Virus record (IMG/VR): IMGVR_UViG_3300024999_000029
Coordinates: 1-64,000 of that record
DNA length: 64,000 bases
Reading direction: 5' to 3' (one strand)
Every line of letters starts with the position of its first letter. Within the stretch, counting starts at the first letter, position 1. Of the stretch, positions 24,769 through 33,286 are shown piece after piece. The notes below the pieces were generated by a model, which was not told where the DNA came from, ran no database searches, and worked only from the letters and a program-made list of their open reading frames with translations. Made by a program: the position numbers and the translations under genes.

Positions 24769-27562
24769 TATTGCTCCTCCTTCCGTAAATGACGATTTTA
24801 TCTAAGTTCAAAACAATAATAATCACATATAATTTTTATATTTTCACTGATTGCTTCTGTTTCATCATAACAATCAATTGACCAATGAATATCAGAGCAA
24901 AATTCTTTTAAGTCCTCAAACATATATTCATAAGCAAATAATATTTCTTTAACATCAAAGTCAGCCAATAGCTCTTTATATGATTGAGTTATTCCCATTA
25001 GTGATTTAATAGCATCAATAATTTGTCTTTCATCGGTGACAGACATATTTTCTGTGTCTATTTTGAAATTACTATAATCTTCATAATTTCGGAACATTAA
25101 AACTCTCATAATACATCCTTTCTAAGTCAAATAGCTTTTCACTGAACTTCAATTTCCTCAATAGATAAACTAGCAACATCAGATCTAAGTGCTTCATTTT
25201 CGATATAACTCAAAGCCTTTTCTAAACTATCATAAATTGCAAGTATTTGACCATATTCCCAAACTAAATAAACTTTCAAGGCGAATTCTCCTTATAAAAT
25301 ATGCGTTTCATCGTGTTTCTTAAATTTGTAACCCTTGTGGCTGTAGGGCTGTAGCATTAGCCATCTTTTATATTTTCACTATATTAACAATTTGTGTAGC
25401 ATAATATTTATATTTTAAGTTTGTACCCTCATTCAATCTTTCTACTAGAGATTCTTGGATTTTTTCAATTAAATCGCTGGTTATTTCTTCATCTATATAG
25501 ATGATCGTATTAAACAAATCTGGATTCTCATCACCATACGCTGCATAGGCTATAAAATATTTCTGTTCCATACCTACTCCTTTCAATGATATCTCTAATT
25601 TATTGTAATTTTTACCGCACATTGGACAAAAGTTAATTTTAATATCTGATAATTCTAACTCATCGTCGGCAATTAAATTACCATTTCCATCAATATAAAC
25701 ACCTTCACTGCCGTTGCCCATTAAATAATCTCTTGAATCTACATCTACGCTACAATATACACATATATCTTCCATAAAATATCTCCTTTCCATAAAATGC
25801 AAGTTTCAAAGTATTAAATCATCAATAACTCCGCCAGTAAGCTCAAATCTATCGCAATTATTTAAGTTGGAGCAGCATATTTTATACATAAGATCATCTT
25901 CCAAACTACTTTTTGCATGTTTGCATCTAAAACTAGGGTATACTGGACAAGGCAATTCTTCAAAAACTAGTTTCACTGGCTTGCTATCTGAAGGTTCATA
26001 TATAATGTAAGTCATATTTTCATCCATTAACAAACCTAAATCCTTGTCTTTCATATCTCTCTCCTTCCAATAAATCACAATTTTTATATAATTATTTGCC
26101 TACCATTTGTGATAATTGTTGTAATATATTTTGTATAGCAAAGTATTGCGGGTTCACAAAAGCAGTTATTGTATCTTGAAGATTGATTAAAATTACTACT
26201 GTTGGAGCTATTACCCCTATAAATGGAAGCAAACAAATTATCAGATACTCTGGATCACCCTCTCCTTCTTTCCATACCTTTATAGTTAATTTCCAAGATA
26301 TAATGGCAACAATTACTCCAAAAACCATCAATAATATATTTGTAATTCCGACAACATAAGATTGTTTCACAAACAATGGATATAAATTATCAACCGTAGT
26401 TCCTAACTTTATCGCAAGTTCTTTTAACATTTCTAAAAATTTATCCATTTCTTTCTCCCTTATCTTATTATATTTTTAATTATTAACATTTCTTTATCTT
26501 CAAATTCCACAATAACTTGATGTTCGCACTCATCACATTCATGTAAATCTTCTGAAAACTTACCTTTATACGGGCAATACTGCTTCCAATTCTTCTTTGT
26601 CATAACTATTTCGCATAAATGACTGTGTGGTATGTATTCCATTACAAGCACCTCTCAATAAAACCAATTTTTTAACGTAAATTTTCTATCTCAAATCTCT
26701 TTAGTTCTTCTAGCAGTTCATTATCTTCAAAATAAAATGGGTCTCTTTCTAACCCGCCTAACCAATTATTAATAAATTGTCCAAATCTCCAGTCAGGTAC
26801 TTTTCTCCAAACTCTTTCAATTTCACCCAAGAATGGCATTATTCTATTTGGATCTCTCACAAAATTACCTCCAATCATTTTATATTTTAGATTATAGGCT
26901 ATATATAAACTCATTACAAGTCATTTTTAAAAGAATGGGGGTAAATTATTACCCCAAAATAATCAAATTTTACGAATGCCCTAATTGCTCCCAATAATCA
27001 GCGTCTATTTTTTCTTTCTGTTGAATACTAAAGCCTTTGATATCATTGAAATTGAATACTATAACCATATAGCCATTGACTTCTTCTAAAGCTTTTTTAT
27101 TTGCAGATAATAGAACGCATAAAGCTTCCACCGCATCATCAATTTGCTGAGTGTTAACTAACAAAGAACAATTCGTTCTAAACATTTTTTAACCTCCTTT
27201 TAATTAAACGTCATTTCAATATGGCAGTGGTTATCACTAAGCGAAGACACTAAAATAGTTGAATTTCCAAACTTTATTCGCTTGCAATCTCCGTTAATAA
27301 CCTCTACTTTCTTTAATTCATCAATTGTCCCCACAATTTTGATTAATTGTCTGGCTAATTTTCTTTCAACAACATCTTTTTCAATCATTCCATCACCTCC
27401 TCGAAGTTAATAAACTCCAATTATTTTAAACGACTCACTTAAAGTGTATTTTATATTCAAAGGCTTTCGCCTGTTGCTTTTATTGTGACCAGTATGATCC
27501 TCTTAGCCTTTTCATTGTTGAAATGTAATTTTCTATGTATTTTTTGTAATTATAAGGCTCTT

Positions 27563-27720
27563 TCGATGGATTTATGTATACTGTGAACTACCACCACCTT
27601 AGAGGTGGATGGCTTCCTGCTCAATAATGCTAATGCACTAAGTATCAACAGGCTATCCCCGTAATCCCTACGGGTTTTTATATATTTACGCTACTAAACT
27701 TAATATCCTAATTCCTTCTT
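27563..27720 (-). ncRNA. TnpB omegaRNA/reRNA scaffold plus guide (approximate limits)
   Basis: Hairpin CCCGTA-GGGAT-TACGGG, right-end hairpin, TTCAC boundary; guide inferred as AGTATACATAAATCCATCGA. Confidence 0.65.
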
Positions 27721-28804
27721 CTCGTATATTCTTAGCTGCATTGTAATCTCTGTCTATAATAATCCCACATGATTTACATATCCACTCTCTATCAGATAAT
27801 TGCAATTCGTGATTTATTTCTCCGCAATCATTGCATGTTTTGCTAGAAGGATACCATTTATCAACCTTAACTAAATATTTACCTTCGTTCTCTAATTTAT
27901 ATTTAAGCATTGTGGTGAACATGCCCCATCCATTATCTGCAACACTCTTACCTAAATTCAAACACTGACTCATTGCTCTCATATTCAAATCTTCAATTAC
28001 AATTACATTATACTGATTAACTAATTCTCTTGATTTCTTATGAAGAAAATCTTTCCTACAATTAGCAACCTTTTCATGTAACTTAGCAACTTTAATTCTT
28101 TGTTTATTTCGGTTATTACTTCCTTTTTGCATTTTAGATAATTTGCGTTGTTCTTTTGCTAGTTGTTCTAATGTTTGACGATAGAATATTGGATATTCTG
28201 CCCTTATACCTTGATTGTCAGTATAAAGATTCTTCATATCCATATCTAATCCTATAACATTGTTTTTCTCTTTAGGTTGAACATACTGCTCAAATTCAAC
28301 TAATATACTTATATAATATTTTCCAGAAGGTGTTTTAGATATTGAACAAGACTTAATTTCTTGATTACTTGGAATTTCTCTATGTTGTACAATGTTGACC
28401 CAGCCAAGTTTAGGTAGTTTGACTTTCTTATTTTTAATTCTGATGTTTCCACCTTGATTATTTGTAGTATAAGAGTTTCTATCTTTATGCTTACTTTTGA
28501 ATTTAGGAAAGCCAACATTTTTGCATCTAAAGAAATTGACGTATGCTGTTTGTAAATTCATTTGGGCATTAGCTAGAGCCAAACTATCCACTTCTTTAAG
28601 CCATTCAAATTCTGCCTTATATTTAGCAGGAGTAGGATTCTTGTGTTTTTTTAATTCTTCTTTATTATCTTTATATTGTTCATATATATCTTTACGCTCT
28701 GCTAACATTTTATTATATACAAATCTAACACATCCAAAAGTTTTGCTAAATAATATTTCTTGTTCTTCATTAGGATATAGCCTAAATTTATAAGCTTTGT
28801 TCAT
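27686..28804 (-). CDS. tnpB: TnpB RNA-guided endonuclease
   Basis: MNKAYKFRLYP HTH start; RuvC residues IGLD, VIED, DRDYNAA intact; CNDC/CKSC Zn ribbon. Confidence 0.95.
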   Translation of the reverse strand: MNKAYKFRLYPNEEQEILFSKTFGCVRFVYNKMLAERKDIYEQYKDNKEELKKHKNPTPAKYKAEFEWLKEVDSLALANAQMNLQTAYVNFFRCKNVGFPKFKSKHKDRNSYTTNNQGGNIRIKNKKVKLPKLGWVNIVQHREIPSNQEIKSCSISKTPSGKYYISILVEFEQYVQPKEKNNVIGLDMDMKNLYTDNQGIRAEYPIFYRQTLEQLAKEQRKLSKMQKGSNNRNKQRIKVAKLHEKVANCRKDFLHKKSRELVNQYNVIVIEDLNMRAMSQCLNLGKSVADNGWGMFTTMLKYKLENEGKYLVKVDKWYPSSKTCNDCGEINHELQLSDREWICKSCGIIIDRDYNAAKNIREEGIRILSLVA

Positions 28805-29016
28805 ATCTTTTCACCTCCTTGATTTTCAATATATTTTTTAATTACATCAATAGGTACACCACCTGTAGTTATCAAACAAAAACTTCTTGACCAAAAATAC
28901 TCTTTCCATAATTGCTTTCTTATTTGAGGGTATTCCTTCTTAATTAATCTACTACTTGCACTTTTATAAGTATTAATAAATTTCGATATTTCAGTATTTG
29001 GATGTGCTTTGAACAA
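28801..29016 (-). pseudogene. tnpA: C-terminal fragment of Y1 transposase TnpA
   Basis: FKAHP..ISKFINTYKSASSR..FWSRSF..TTGG..VIKKYIENQ; the HUH motif and N-half are missing. Confidence 0.85.
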
Positions 29017-29966
29017 TCTAGTTTAGGTTAAACGGACTTTCACTCCATATTTCTTCAAATTTTCTTTTCATTTTTAACCTCACTATTTTATATTTTAGTT
29101 TATTGGATTATTTGTAAAATTTGATTTACTGCATCCTCTACGTTAATATTTCTTAGCTGTGCTTTTTTCTTCTGGATTTTTAAAGCTTTTACTCCACCGT
29201 CAGCATAGGAAGCATTAATGCTATTATTTTTCTTTAGTTTTTTAAGCCAATTTGGTTTATAAGTTAGTCTTCTACTCATATATTTTCTCCAATATTACTT
29301 TAAAATTCTTCTTTGAACTAAACTGATAAATCTACATTTAAACACTTTAATTTTCTCTGAAGTTCAACAATAACAGACTCTACGTCTTTTATGCTTTCTG
29401 GATTAATAGATACATTTATAGTTATGTTTGCTGATTCTTTCTTATTAAAATAACCACTATCTTCCGCAACTACAATCATATCATTTAAATAATCTCTTAT
29501 TTTAACAGCATTTTCTATTGAAAAAATTGTATTACAACCATCTGTTGATGAATTCATTAAGTAAAAACTACGTCCTTCACTAAGATTGTTGATATATGCC
29601 TCTTTGCTTTTAAAATTACAAGTCAATTCATATTTTTTATTATTTATTTCAATAAATGCACCGCTATCTTCTTTCCACATAATAATCTCCTTTGTGTTTT
29701 ATTTTTGTTTCAAACTGCTATTTTATGGTAATTTCATATCCTTTGTTCTACGCTTTAAATTTCTTAGTGACAAAGAATCAAATTTGTCACAATCCATTCT
29801 GGAGTTTCGTGTTGATTCCCAAAAAAACTCGAAGGAAGGTGTAGTCTTAACTGAATCCTATCTGCATTTCAGACTAAGTTACTTTACTAGCTTTGTCATC
29901 TGCCCTAATGGGTTGCGTTTAAAGTGTAGAGTAAAAGATATGAAATTTCATTAAAATATTGTTTTG

Positions 29967-30103
29967 ATTGTAATTCCCTCCCCTTACAACCATGATTGGT
30001 TAGCAGAGTTGCGAAACCAATCATTCCCTCGTCTAACTTAGTTAACATACTCGGACTCTGCTGTACCTAGTTAACATCATTAGACATGCCGTTTTACTAC
30101 AAT
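29967..30103 (-). ncRNA. Candidate structured RNA with kissing-loop
   Basis: 10-bp hairpin 29992-30024 and multi-helix hairpin 30031-30085; their loops carry complementary AGCAGAGT/ACTCTGCT; G-U pairs favour the minus strand. Confidence 0.55.
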
Positions 30104-30123
30104 ATCATTGTTTTATTAAATTC

Positions 30124-30205
30124 TGGGGTGGGAAGGATTTGAACCTTCCTCAACGTAAAAAGCTTTTTACGTTTCGTACGCTGACCTACCGACAAGGACA
30201 CCCCA
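30124..30205 (-). ncRNA. tRNA-like RNA, 82 nt, no valid anticodon arm
   Basis: Acceptor TGGGGTG/CACCCCA, T-arm GGAAGG-TTCAAAT-CCTTCC, 22-bp perfect palindrome in place of the anticodon/variable arm. Confidence 0.65.
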
Positions 30206-30228
30206 TAAAACTCATCGTTTAAATTAAT

Positions 30229-30341
30229 TATGCGGGTAAGAAATTTCATCTTACATGACTAACATCTTCGTCTAGTTACACAACCACACAGGCTGCACAA
30301 AGTTCGTCAAGCTCCATAGCGTCTTATTCCGCCACCGCATA
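30229..30341 (-). ncRNA. tRNA-like RNA, 113 nt
   Basis: Acceptor TATGCGG/CCGCATA, U8, D-arm GCG-GAATAAGA-CGC, T-like arm GTAAGA-TGAAATT-TCTTAC, ~63-nt insert. Confidence 0.65.
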
Positions 30342-30359
30342 AAACTATTATTTTATATT

Positions 30360-30803
30360 CTATTTCTTATTGCCTACTTTACAAACCCCACTAAGATGAT
30401 CTACTTCATGACATATTATTCTAGCTTGCAATCCTTCGGCTTCTATTTCAGTTTCTTCACCATTCGGAAGATTAAATTTTACTTTAATGATTTCTGGTCT
30501 TTTTATTTTTCTATTTAATTTTGGATAACTTAAACATCCTTCAAATCCTTCAATTGAGCCTTCTCTATATATAATTATTGGATTTATTAAAGGTAGAATC
30601 GTTTCTGATTTTATATCAGTCACAATAATTACTCTTTTAGTTACTCCAATTTGAGGTGCAGCAAGACCAATCCCATCATTTTTCTTCATTGTATCTTCCA
30701 TGTCTTGAATTATGACTAACAATTCTTCATTATATTCGGTTATATCTTCACATTTTTGCTTTAATATTGGATTGTTAAACATACACAATGGTCGTACTGA
30801 CAT
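30360..30803 (-). CDS. def: Peptide deformylase (short C-terminus)
   Basis: GIGLAAPQIG, EGCLS, HEVDH motifs. Confidence 0.95.
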   Translation of the reverse strand: MSVRPLCMFNNPILKQKCEDITEYNEELLVIIQDMEDTMKKNDGIGLAAPQIGVTKRVIIVTDIKSETILPLINPIIIYREGSIEGFEGCLSYPKLNRKIKRPEIIKVKFNLPNGEETEIEAEGLQARIICHEVDHLSGVCKVGNKK

Positions 30804-31074
30804 GATATTTTCTCCTTTGCATGAAACCTGTCATTTATTTGCATTTCTTATACTACTTCAAAACAATTTATCATTAAATAATCTTCATATCCAAAAGGCA
30901 TTCCACATAATTGATATCTTCCTTCTTTATTAATTCCCATGAACATATATTGAACGCTTTTTCCTTCTCTTTTTTTATAAACCATTGTTTTTCGAGGCTC
31001 TAATTTATTCAATTGGTCTCTTGTCATAGTTATTTCCTTTCATAGTTACCTTAAAATCTGCCCTTTAATCAAAC

Positions 31075-31470
31075 TTATTTTTTAATATTTGCTAAGTCTA
31101 TATCTATATTTTGTTTTATACTATTTGGTGGAATGTGAAATTTCCAATCATAAATATCTGCTAATTTAGTTTCATTGCATATTGATACCGCATATGGCTT
31201 TTCTATATTGACATCTTCATAAAAAAATATGTTTTTATATGGTAATTTAATAAGGGATGTCGCTCCAGTGCTGTCTCTTACATAAGCATAATAGTATATT
31301 TCTTCTTTTATTGTTGCTGACCAAATAAAGAATATACCTCCAGCAGAGGCTCCAATATTTGAATTATTTTCAAGAGCTATTAAATCATATCTGTTTTCAG
31401 TCGGCGACTCACATCCAAGTAGTTGTGTAGATAATATTATTATAAGTATTAATATCATTAATTTTTTCAT
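31075..31470 (-). CDS. Putative lipoprotein
   Basis: MKK-hydrophobic-LLGC lipobox. Confidence 0.65.
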   Translation of the reverse strand: MKKLMILILIIILSTQLLGCESPTENRYDLIALENNSNIGASAGGIFFIWSATIKEEIYYYAYVRDSTGATSLIKLPYKNIFFYEDVNIEKPYAVSICNETKLADIYDWKFHIPPNSIKQNIDIDLANIKK

Positions 31471-31510
31471 AATTTCTCCTTTTCTATAAATTAAGCATTT
31501 CGTGGGAATT

Positions 31511-31585
31511 TGGAGACTCTAGTAGGACTTGAACCTACGATGATAGTTTTGCAGACTATCGCCTTACCATCTTGGCTATAGAGTC
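31511..31585 (-). tRNA. tRNA-Cys (GCA), CCA encoded
   Basis: GACTCTA/TAGAGTC acceptor, GCC/GGC D-stem, ATAGT-CTGCAAA-ACTAT anticodon arm, GTAGG-TTCAAGT-CCTAC, U73-CCA. Confidence 0.97.
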
Positions 31586-31595
31586 ATATTAAATT

Positions 31596-31801
31596 GTGGC
31601 TGGCGGGATTGGCTACCCGCAATTGATGGTACTGTGGCTCTAATAATCTACACTAACGCTGCAATACGTTACACCTTTCGCCTAGGACTCTTGCCACCAT
31701 GTGGGTACATTCAGGATGTTCTCACGCCTCGATTATTAGTTTAACCACGCTTTCCACATCGGATTATTGTCTTGACCGCCTTTAAATTTGGCTACAGCCA
31801 C
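31596..31801 (-). ncRNA. tRNA-like RNA, 206 nt, with large structured insert
   Basis: Acceptor GTGGCTG/CAGCCAC, TA-GCC-AAATTTAAA-GGC D-arm, GCGGG-TAGCCAAT-CCCGC T-like arm; insert with CTAATAATC/GATTATTAG helix. Confidence 0.7.
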
Positions 31802-31926
31802 GTATTTCCAACCCTATAAACCCCATACTTTGTTCAAGCAGCTTCCGCAAACTTAGGTTAGTAAAATTAAGGAGGATTCGCACTTGTCGAGCGTTGATCC
31901 AATTTCTCACCTTAATTTAAGTTTTT

Positions 31927-31974
31927 ATCTGTGCTGTCTAACGTTGACAAGTTCCAATATTTCACCACACAGAT
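31927..31974 (-). ncRNA. Minimal tRNA-like RNA, 48 nt (acceptor + D-like + T-like arm only)
   Basis: ATCTGTG-TG-GTGAAATATTGGAAC-TTGTC-AACGTTA-GACAG-CACAGAT. Confidence 0.45.
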
Positions 31975-32110
31975 TTTTAGAGGGAATATAATTTACCTAC
32001 AAATCCCGACATCTAAACACATTAGCAATTTCCACTATCCAATGCCAAACTCAGTCAAGTGTTTCGCTTTCACAGTGGTTTGTGTCAGCTAGTTTAAGCA
32101 AAACTATCTT

Positions 32111-32638
32111 TTATCTTGATATTAAAAACTTATTAACTGCTTCCTCCACCTTATCTAATCCTTCTTCAACTGGTATATAAGCATCAAAGTTATAATAATC
32201 TAAATCTGTCTCACTTATATGATTCTGCTGTTCTTTTGATAATGGACTTACTAATCCTTTTCTAACTACTCTTACAGACATTTCTTCAAAATCTGGAGAA
32301 TTCATTATATTAACTTCATTCCTAAATCTTGTATCTGGAATGATAATCACATCATATTCTCTACCGAAAGTTTTAATAAACTCTCTTATAACATTAACCC
32401 AAACATCTAGATTTACATTTCTACCTTTGTCTGTACCAATTTCTTGCCACTTTGATCTATTTTCACTAGTCTTTTCACGTGTAGCTCCGAAATAATTTAC
32501 ACAACAGTCTTTTACGTAATCCGCATAATGTACTATTAATACCTTTTTACCTTCTTGTTCTAGACTATTTTTAATCATCATTGCAATTGTGTCTTTCCCT
32601 GACGTTGCCTTTCCCGAAATCTGCATTATTAACGTCAC
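32111..32638 (-). CDS. P-loop nucleoside-monophosphate kinase-like protein (phage dNMP kinase type)
   Basis: ISGKATSGKDT, YADYVKD, WQEIGTD, IIPDTRFRNE, HISETDLD. Confidence 0.75.
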   Translation of the reverse strand: MTLIMQISGKATSGKDTIAMMIKNSLEQEGKKVLIVHYADYVKDCCVNYFGATREKTSENRSKWQEIGTDKGRNVNLDVWVNVIREFIKTFGREYDVIIIPDTRFRNEVNIMNSPDFEEMSVRVVRKGLVSPLSKEQQNHISETDLDYYNFDAYIPVEEGLDKVEEAVNKFLISR

Positions 32639-32656
32639 CTTAACTAACCTCCACTT

Positions 32657-33286
32657 TTATATTTTATCTTTCAAAACGTAAACATCTAGTTTCCTTACTC
32701 CAAAATCCATAGCATCTGATTTATTATTCATATACACATCAATACAATTATTCTTTATTGCTCCTCCTCTATCTTCAGTTATAAATATTCCTTCATTCGG
32801 GTAATCTTTAAAGTATGGTATGTACACTTTAGTTCCAAACGGTATTTGTTTACCTGTTGCTATTGTTCTCCATTGCTTAACATATTTACCACTTGCAGTT
32901 ACTCCAAACGCAGGATCTGAAGGTTCTTTATCACATTCATAAGCTGTATAAGCAGTAACTTTCATTCTTGATTTTTCAATTATATCAAATCTATCAAAGC
33001 TACCTCTCGATGCTAATTTTACTTCTTTCTCTTTTATATTTTGCTTTATTGGTGTAACTATTGGTTCTTTTGCTTTTGGAATATCTAAGGATTCCTTAAC
33101 TTCAATATTTAATTTAGGTGCTGGATTAACTACTTTTTCGATACCATTCTTGATACTTTGGAAAACTAGCAACGATGCTGCTGTCAATATGATTGCTATA
33201 ATAAATGAGAATCTTTTTAAGTCACGTATTCTTATTCCGTATTTTCGATTTGTTTTTAGAGATTTGAATATTAGTTTTTTGAACAT
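32657..33286 (-). CDS. Membrane-anchored 3D-domain (lytic transglycosylase-like) protein
   Basis: TM helix, then MKVTAY..., TASG, TIAT, IPFGTKVYI, EDRGGAIKNNCIDVY. Confidence 0.85.
   Translation of the reverse strand: MFKKLIFKSLKTNRKYGIRIRDLKRFSFIIAIILTAASLLVFQSIKNGIEKVVNPAPKLNIEVKESLDIPKAKEPIVTPIKQNIKEKEVKLASRGSFDRFDIIEKSRMKVTAYTAYECDKEPSDPAFGVTASGKYVKQWRTIATGKQIPFGTKVYIPYFKDYPNEGIFITEDRGGAIKNNCIDVYMNNKSDAMDFGVRKLDVYVLKDKI

What the first reader, a model, noticed from the sequence alone, without database searches (positions are those of the whole stretch)
27480..29071. Immobilised IS605 element that keeps an intact TnpB able to target the empty phage allele
Seen: only 11 nt (CCTAAACTAGA) separate the TTTAA target motif from a tnpA fragment lacking HUH, so the left-end hairpin and the 5' half of tnpA are deleted. 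tnpB catalytic residues, the omegaRNA scaffold and the right end are intact. Precise removal rejoins a 48-codon ORF in frame (CCG TTT AA|A GTA TAC), which fixes both junctions. Known: TnpB cuts TAM+guide sequences found at empty donor sites. Inference: this TnpB could cut sibling phages carrying TTTAA-AGTATACATAAATCC and act as a homing drive or competition weapon without transposing.
Basis: partly seen in the sequence, partly recalled or inferred. Interest (0 to 1): 0.6.

Follow-up and report, generated by a model that had tools for sequence, protein, structure and literature searches.

The report
Stranded IS605 element in jumbo phage
A 349-kb groundwater phage carries a jumping gene that can no longer jump but keeps an apparently working RNA-guided DNA cutter, and its built-in guide matches the uninterrupted gene of a sibling phage from the same samples; this makes it a natural candidate for nuclease-driven 'homing' between phages, though nothing shows yet that it cuts.

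Summary
Window 27583-29027 (minus strand, 1445 bp) is an IS200/IS605-family element inserted just 3' of TTTAA in a 48-codon phage ORF. Both junctions are fixed to the base by an uninterrupted 48-codon paralog in the same genome, by an uninterrupted ortholog in a sibling phage, and by contigs in three samples that skip exactly 27583-29027.

Compared with intact relatives, about 290 bp are missing. The loss covers the left-end hairpin and the 5' half of tnpA, including HUH. No other tnpA was found in the phage.

The rest looks intact:
- TnpB has 372 aa, D187/E271/D353 and two CxxC pairs.
- The right-end hairpin is present.
- The omegaRNA 3' scaffold is supported by covariation.

The sibling's empty allele carries TTTAA plus a 16/16-nt match to the guide, and it co-occurs with the IS-bearing phage in all three samples. 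The phage's own genome holds no TAM-adjacent match.

The target exists, but cleavage, spread and selection after immobilisation are not shown. The insertion is seen in one phage background only, and dN/dS is uninformative.

The mechanism itself is already in the literature: TnpA-independent TnpB gene drive in plasmids, and a proposed 'non-restorative transposon homing'. This is a new member of a known kind, of moderate interest.

The parts
29028..29071 (-). 5' part of the interrupted 48-codon phage ORF (ATG at 29071). It ends in the TTTAA target/TAM (29028-29032). As it stands it reads 17 codons and then a TAG at 29018-29020.
   Evidence: uninterrupted paralog and ortholog.
29017..29027 (-). 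11-nt remnant of the left end (CCTAAACTAGA). Its first 6 nt equal the start of the left end in relative L108. The subterminal hairpin that follows in relatives is absent.
28801..29016 (-). tnpA remnant of 71 codons, the C-terminal half of a Y1 HUH transposase. It keeps the ...KKYIENQ helix that carries the catalytic Tyr in IS608 TnpA (that motif identification is from my memory of IS608) and lacks HUH. Its stop overlaps the tnpB start (ATGA).
   Evidence: profile positions 62-126 of 126; 89% identical to the L018 C-terminus; HVH codons lie just upstream in intact relatives.
27686..28804 (-). tnpB, 372 aa, an RNA-guided endonuclease of the IS200/IS605 family. RuvC triad D187/E271/D353; zinc-finger pairs CNDC (324) and CKSC (343).
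27583..27796 (-). Predicted omegaRNA scaffold, overlapping the 3' end of tnpB and running to the right-end boundary at 27583. Conserved helices: CCCGTA/TACGGG (27658-27674), a composite middle helix (about 27613-27650), and the right-end hairpin CCACCT/AGGTGG (27594-27608). The terminus reads ...GGTAGTTCAC. The 5' limit is not determined.
   Evidence: Rfam has no matching family.
27567..27582 (-). Guide-encoding flank (AGTATACATAAATCCA), the first 16 nt after the right end. It is identical to the 16 nt that follow TTTAA in the sibling phage's uninterrupted allele.
27480..27582 (-). 3' part of the interrupted 48-codon ORF (stop at 27480-27482).
   Evidence: 83-86% identical to the paralog and the ortholog.

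Best explanation
Shown. An IS605-group element from a Firmicutes-type clade that inserts 3' of TTTAA transposed into a small ORF of a 349-kb groundwater phage. It then lost about 290 bp spanning its left-end hairpin and the HUH half of tnpA. By the established peel-and-paste mechanism, TnpA must bind a subterminal hairpin at both ends. The element therefore can no longer be excised, even by a TnpA supplied in trans.

Inferred. The tnpB gene, its ribosome-binding site, the omegaRNA scaffold and the right end are intact and point the same way as the surrounding phage genes. Read-through transcription should therefore yield TnpB plus an omegaRNA whose guide is the 16 or more nt beyond the right end.

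Inferred mode of action. When this phage co-infects a cell with a phage carrying the uninterrupted allele (TTTAA plus a matching protospacer), TnpB-omegaRNA would cut that allele. Such an allele exists in a sibling phage from the same samples. Either the break is repaired from the IS-bearing genome, copying the element across (non-restorative homing), or the competitor genome is simply damaged, given flanks only 86-91% identical. The carrier is immune because the insertion separates the TAM from the protospacer.
For: Anatomy and junctions.
Deletion defined against intact relatives L018 and L109.
TTTAA precedes the left end in about 30 intact relatives, and the published ISAam1 TnpB uses a TTTAA TAM.
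omegaRNA covariation.
Empty allele with TAM plus a 16/16 match in a sibling phage. The same allele lies on a 9.4-kb contig of the window's own metagenome.
Exact 1445-nt skip joints in all three samples beside the IS-bearing form.
No TAM-adjacent match in the phage's own genome.
TnpA-independent, RuvC-dependent displacement of IS-free plasmids by IS605 has been shown experimentally.
Homing into co-infecting phages has been proposed in a review.
Against: There are no expression or cleavage data; all runs are DNA contigs.
The insertion occurs in one phage background only, with an identical context on 9 contigs. There is no evidence of spread.
dN/dS cannot show constraint after the deletion.
The sibling's flanks are 9-14% diverged, with mismatches at guide positions 17 and 19, so repair-mediated copying may be inefficient.
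Whether the two phages share a host is unknown.
TnpB-only and tnpA-remnant copies are common in bacteria, where no such role needs to be invoked.
Confidence: 0.55

Rival explanations
1. Neutral relic. The element is a recently inserted, recently truncated dead-end IS. tnpB is intact only because too little time has passed for it to decay, and the guide matches the sibling allele simply because every IS605 guide equals its own flank. It does nothing for the phage or for itself.
For: The tnpA remnant has no stops, and its dN/dS (0.145) equals that of tnpB, so the deletion looks recent. All 9 contigs carrying this TnpB are the same phage with identical sequence. Half of the bacterial relatives also lack an intact tnpA. 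No second background carries the insertion.
Against: Loss of tnpA with retention of a full-length tnpB and right end recurs with different deletion endpoints in phage-borne and prophage-like relatives (window, L007, L008, L009 group, L108). This fits retention of the nuclease module. Even without selection, an intact TnpB-omegaRNA would still cut the co-occurring empty allele if it is expressed.
Confidence: 0.35
2. Domesticated for another job. The fixed-guide TnpB serves the phage otherwise, for example as a regulator or as a nuclease against a host or plasmid target, rather than acting on the empty allele.
For: TnpB domestication is documented: nuclease-dead TldR regulators appear among the titles. 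The phage also holds a second, distant TnpB next to a small ribbon-helix-helix-like ORF.
Against: The catalytic triad is intact, unlike known domesticated regulators. The guide is simply the interrupted gene's own sequence. No other TAM-adjacent match exists in the phage genome, and no host genome is known to search.
Confidence: 0.06
3. Assembly artefact. The insertion or the deletion is a chimeric join made by the assembler.
For: The data are metagenomic. Related IS fragments from very abundant organisms (1,100-8,000x) occur in the same runs.
Against: The identical structure is assembled in independent assemblies (JGI, ENA and Logan; 9 contigs, several samples), with zero differences across both junctions.
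Confidence: 0.02

Closest known systems
IS605-group elements with a TTTAA target/TAM (ISAam1-type; Bacillota)
   Same: The tnpA-tnpB order with an overlapping stop/start, TTTAA immediately 5' of the left end, the ...GTTCAC right terminus, the right-end hairpin, and the omegaRNA helices. TnpB is 60-65% identical to Bacillaceae copies and 71-74% to Desulfosporosinus copies.
   Different: The left-end hairpin and the HUH half of tnpA are deleted, and the element sits in a jumbo-phage genome. Identity to ISAam1 itself was not measured because its sequence was not in hand.
ISDra2 TnpB-omegaRNA (structures 8BF8/8EXA/8H1J) and restorative homing (Karvelis 2021; Meers 2023)
   Same: The same protein family (E=2.7e-73), with the catalytic D/E/D and zinc finger aligned. 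The guide is the flank beyond the right end, and the target is the TAM joined to that flank at an empty site.
   Different: The TAM is TTTAA, not TTGAT. With no TnpA and no left end, the element never creates its own empty donor site, so only a foreign empty allele can be a target.
TnpA-independent TnpB gene drive in plasmid populations (bioRxiv 10.1101/2025.02.20.638934) and 'transposon non-restorative homing' (review PMC13565253)
   Same: An IS-bearing replicon displaces or converts an IS-free homolog through RuvC- and guide-dependent cutting. Inactivating TnpA did not remove the effect. The review lists co-infecting phages as possible targets.
   Different: Those data are engineered plasmids with isogenic flanks. 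Here the case is natural and uncultured, the flanks are 86-91% identical, and there is no functional test.
tnpB-only (IS1341-like) elements and TnpA-less IStrons
   Same: The nuclease and omegaRNA are kept after loss of the transposase. Relatives L009 group, L008 and L108 are of this kind.
   Different: Those keep both ends and can be mobilised in trans. The window copy has lost the left-end hairpin as well.
Free-standing and intron-borne homing endonucleases of T-even phages (SegF, I-TevI; marker exclusion)
   Same: A nuclease gene whose presence disrupts its own target, predicted to act on a co-infecting relative.
   Different: Target recognition is by RNA guide plus TAM, not by protein. There is no splicing, so the host ORF is destroyed.

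Membership tests
IS200/IS605 family, IS605 group (autonomous element) | Intact Y1 HUH transposase TnpA (HUH motif plus catalytic Tyr) | tested here: not met
   Only profile positions 62-126 of 126 are present, and the HVH codons of relatives lie in the deleted part. The remnant shows descent from such an element, not current autonomy.
IS200/IS605 family, IS605 group (autonomous element) | Subterminal imperfect hairpins at both the left and right ends | tested here: not met
   The right-end hairpin is present at 27594-27608. The left end has only 11 nt and no G+C-rich hairpin, whereas relatives carry CTCCC..GGGAG-type hairpins there.
IS200/IS605 family, IS605 group (autonomous element) | Insertion immediately 3' of a specific short motif, without target duplication | tested here: met
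   Empty and occupied alleles differ by exactly 27583-29027, inserted between TTTAA and AGTATAC with no duplicated bases. TTTAA precedes the left end in about 30 relatives.
TnpB RNA-guided endonuclease (OMEGA, IS605-type) | RuvC-like D-E-D triad and a C-terminal zinc finger in a protein of about 350-400 aa | tested here: met
   372 aa. D187/E271/D353 align to ISDra2 D191/E278/D361; CNDC and CKSC are present. NF040570 scores 358 bits against a cut-off of 100.
TnpB RNA-guided endonuclease (OMEGA, IS605-type) | A structured omegaRNA encoded across the tnpB 3' end and the right end, ending at the transposon boundary | tested here: met
   Three helices conserved in 23 relatives, with 15 of 21 pairs showing compensatory changes; the window copy forms all of them (z = -2.5). 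No Rfam family matched. RNA ends were not observed.
TnpB RNA-guided endonuclease (OMEGA, IS605-type) | TAM- and guide-dependent DNA cleavage | not testable with these tools
   No RNA runs hold the locus. This needs a plasmid-interference or in vitro assay.
Homing element (nuclease-driven spread into empty alleles) | An uninterrupted, cleavable target allele exists in related genomes that can meet the carrier | tested here: met
   The sibling phage allele has TTTAA plus a 16/16 match. It occurs in the same metagenome and in all three samples. A shared host is not shown.
Homing element (nuclease-driven spread into empty alleles) | The same insertion in diverged backgrounds, or co-conversion tracts around it | tested here: not met
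   Right-end junction and protein look-ups find only one phage background. The flanks show no tract of raised identity to the sibling (86% and 91%).

The most novel reading that the evidence does not exclude
In large phages, IS605 elements that have lost tnpA (and here even the left end) persist as RNA-guided homing or exclusion nucleases. They cut the uninterrupted allele of co-infecting sibling phages. If so, this locus would be the first natural phage example of TnpA-independent, 'non-restorative' transposon homing, with donor and target caught in the same aquifer samples.
Probability: 0.3. Interest if true: 0.6.

Novelty: new member of a known kind. Interest (0 to 1): 0.4.

Why it matters
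TnpB is the ancestor of Cas12. Its natural role is thought to be selfish retention or spread of its transposon. TnpA-independent drive has so far been shown only with engineered plasmids, and spread between co-infecting phages has only been proposed.

This locus offers a concrete natural pair to test that idea:
- a carrier that cannot transpose, so any spread must be nuclease-driven;
- a co-occurring sibling with a perfect TAM plus 16-nt target;
- an in-genome paralog that serves as a built-in non-target control.

It also adds to the picture that phage-borne copies of this clade repeatedly lose tnpA but keep tnpB. If TnpB turns out to be inactive, the locus is just one more decaying insertion sequence.

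Tried and rejected
- Rfam at permissive E-values found no omegaRNA family in 26500-30000.
- Megablast against GenBank phages found nothing, so relatives had to come from IMG/VR and metagenomes.
- The promoter/terminator scan was uninformative: 10 sites against 11.6 expected.
- dN/dS was meant to test selection on tnpB. It is low (0.12-0.15), but the dead tnpA remnant gives the same value, so it cannot speak to the period after immobilisation.
- I looked for constraint in a Bacillus cereus-group lineage that shares a truncated-tnpA copy (L029/30/32/33). The copies differ by 0-1 nt, so there is no power.
- Exact-match searches for empty alleles of the phage-borne relatives L007 and the L009 group in IMG/VR found none.
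- I looked for an empty allele of the same phage (flanks about 100% identical) in four runs. Only the diverged sibling's allele appeared. Logan contigs drop rare variants, so this does not prove that excision is absent.
- A second joint (27554->29068) probably reflects a paralogous or third allele and was not resolved.
- An assembly artefact was rejected (see rival explanations).
- No structure prediction or complex prediction was run, because family membership was already unambiguous by sequence.
Full report
WHAT THE WINDOW IS

The window is the first 64 kb of a 349,050-bp virus record. CheckV rates it 99% complete, it has about 28% G+C, and it comes from a groundwater metagenome. Genes around the finding are small unknown ORFs on the minus strand, plus a phage peptide deformylase and a membrane protein.

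ANATOMY

All features lie on the minus strand.
- **Interrupted ORF.** A 48-codon ORF starts at 29071. It is interrupted after ...CCG TTT AA (TTTAA = 29028-29032).
- **Left-end remnant.** Eleven bases follow (CCTAAACTAGA, 29017-29027).
- **tnpA remnant.** A 71-codon frame (28801-29016) matches only positions 62-126 of the 126-position IS200/IS605 transposase model.
- **tnpB.** It occupies 27686-28804 (372 aa) and begins with an ATGA overlap behind a GGAGGTGA ribosome-binding site. It scores 415 bits to IS200_TnpB, 10 bits under that model's 425-bit cut-off, and 358 bits to guided_TnpB, whose cut-off is 100.
- **Right end.** A further 103 nt run to the boundary ...GGTAGTTCAC at 27583.
- **Rest of the ORF.** The interrupted ORF then continues as AGT ATA CAT AAA TCC... 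to its stop at 27480.

The element proper is therefore 27583-29027 (1445 bp).

JUNCTIONS

Three independent lines fix both junctions to the base.
1. The same genome holds a duplicated module: window 26658-33000 against about 190.8-194.8 kb, 78-88% identical. Its copy of the small ORF is uninterrupted and also 48 codons long. It reads CCG TTT ACA GTA AGA at the site.
2. An exact-pattern scan for the predicted empty site found a 139-kb IMG/VR contig (L017) whose flanks are 86-91% identical to the window. Its ortholog is an uninterrupted 48-codon ORF reading ...CCG TTT AAA GTA TAC ATA AAT CCA....
3. A 9.4-kb contig from the window's own metagenome (L104) carries the same empty allele. It is 99.9% identical to that sibling over 6 kb.

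Laying contigs of four runs (three samples, one study) on the locus gave a joint from 27582 to 29028 in every sample. It skips exactly 1445 nt and always lies on sibling-type sequence (about 23 differences per 170 nt), beside the IS-bearing form. Approximate depths, sibling against IS-bearing form, were 3.8 against 21, 19.7 against about 60, and 4.9 against about 3.5. No bases are duplicated or lost at the site. This is the hallmark of IS200/IS605 insertion.

THE DELETION

The closest intact relatives are L109 (TnpB 85% identical, right end identical to the window's) and L018 (78%). Both have this layout: TTTAA, a left end with a CTCCC...GGGAG-type hairpin, a promoter-like spacer, a tnpA of about 139 codons with H-V-H, and then tnpB.

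Homology to the window's tnpA resumes at ...TT(A/G) TTC AAA GCA CAT CC, directly after the HVH(I) codons. The window's 11-nt remnant begins CCTAAA, like the left end of relative L108. L018's element is 1733 bp against 1445 bp here, so about 290 bp are missing. That stretch covers the left-end hairpin, the spacer, and tnpA codons 1 to about 62.

No G+C-rich inverted repeat remains at the left end, and the phage encodes no other tnpA. By the established peel-and-paste mechanism, TnpA must recognise hairpins at both ends. The element is therefore immobile, even if a host supplied TnpA in trans.

WHAT IS INTACT

- **TnpB.** It aligns end to end with ISDra2 TnpB (E=2.7e-73). D187/E271/D353 sit on D191/E278/D361, and both CxxC pairs are present.
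- **Right end and RNA scaffold.** The region downstream of tnpB shares the clade's architecture. An alignment of 23 relatives gives three helices, and 15 of 21 pairs show compensatory changes. The window copy forms all three.
- **TAM.** TTTAA immediately precedes the left end in about 30 intact relatives. It is also the published TAM of ISAam1 TnpB.
- **Guide.** The 16-nt guide sequence occurs once in the 349-kb genome. There it sits behind TTCAC rather than TTTAA, so the carrier is not a target. The paralog has TTTAC and diverges from protospacer position 6.
- **Target.** The sibling's allele has TTTAA plus 16 of 16 matching bases, with mismatches only at positions 17 and 19.

WHAT IS NOT SHOWN

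- **Expression and cleavage.** No RNA data exist for the locus.
- **Spread.** The right-end junction pattern, and a look-up of the exact TnpB protein, find only this one phage: 9 contigs with the same context. There is no sign of spread into other backgrounds and no co-conversion tract.
- **Selection.** tnpB has dN/dS of 0.12-0.15 against its nearest relatives. The dead tnpA remnant gives 0.145, so the divergence predates the deletion. The deletion is probably recent.
- **Uniqueness.** Among 75 bacterial relatives, 38 have an intact tnpA, 16 have a remnant and 21 have none. Loss of tnpA with retention of tnpB is therefore ordinary in this clade.

Phage-borne and prophage-like relatives show the same trend with different deletion endpoints:
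- L007 keeps the left end and a 48-codon tnpA remnant.
- L108 keeps the left end and about 12 tnpA codons.
- L008 and the L009 group have no tnpA.

This fits retention of the nuclease module but does not prove it.

MECHANISM AND RIVALS

The best-supported reading is a stranded IS605 element whose TnpB-omegaRNA could cut the uninterrupted allele of a co-infecting sibling phage. The break would either copy the element across by repair or damage the competitor. The chief rival, nearly as likely, is that it is a recent neutral relic. Domestication for another role and assembly artefact are unlikely; the reasons are given under the rival explanations.

COMPARISON WITH THE LITERATURE

- TnpB-mediated cutting of empty donor sites, with homologous repair (restorative homing), is established.
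- A preprint shows that IS605-bearing plasmids displace IS-free ones. The effect depends on the TnpB nuclease and its guide, not on TnpA catalysis.
- A 2026 review names 'transposon non-restorative homing' and lists co-infecting phages as possible targets, pending experimental validation.
- TnpB genes in phages, including huge phages, are reported, but without this analysis.
- Four literature searches turned up no described phage case with both carrier and empty target.

VERDICT

The finding is a well-documented new member of a known kind. Interest is 0.4.

Noticed in passing
G000:C1:317339-318481 (+), outside the window (L004:1498-2640): A second, intact TnpB-like gene (380 aa, 33% identical to the first). 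A divergently oriented 51-aa ORF beside it (L004:1263-1418) looks like a ribbon-helix-helix/Arc protein, judged by eye and not scanned against families. No tnpA is nearby. A 2026 preprint title reports that Arc represses IS605 genes.
   Followed up: partly
window 26658-33000 versus G000:C1:190805-194825: A multi-gene module of small ORFs is duplicated within the phage genome at 78-88% identity, in patches. The sibling phage's module is mosaic: nearer the window copy upstream of the site, and nearer the paralog downstream.
   Followed up: partly
L008:2823-2925: A solo right-end/omegaRNA-like segment ending in GGTAGTTCAC lies about 75 nt upstream of a tnpA-less tnpB in a 17.5-kb viral contig. 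It looks like the remnant of a tandem or nested insertion.
   Followed up: no
L009, L010, L012, L013, L015, L016 (viral contigs of 11-379 kb): A tnpB-only relative (59-61% identical) has an intact TTTAA, left-end hairpin and promoter-like spacer. In at least five of these contigs it sits at the same site with the same right flank (L012 ends before the right end), apparently inside an ORF. No empty allele was found by exact match.
   Followed up: partly
window 27608-28420 (tnpB interior), runs X1-X4: Short contigs at 1,100-8,000x depth resemble parts of tnpB at about 87% identity. Related IS copies therefore sit in very abundant organisms of the same groundwater samples, which are possible donors or hosts.
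   Followed up: no
L029, L030, L032, L033 (Bacillus mobilis, B. sanguinis, B. pacificus, B. hominis): A copy with a 39-codon tnpA remnant and an intact tnpB, flanks included, is identical to within 0-1 nt across four named species. This suggests it rides on a recently shared mobile region.
   Followed up: partly
window 27554/29068 joint in runs X1-X3: A second skip joint (1513 nt), at depths of 5-39, differs from the exact empty-site joint. It is probably a paralogous or third allele of the small ORF. Not resolved.
   Followed up: no
window 30360-30803 (-): A phage-encoded peptide deformylase (phrog_2890, E=3e-37) lies 1.3 kb upstream of the element.
   Followed up: no
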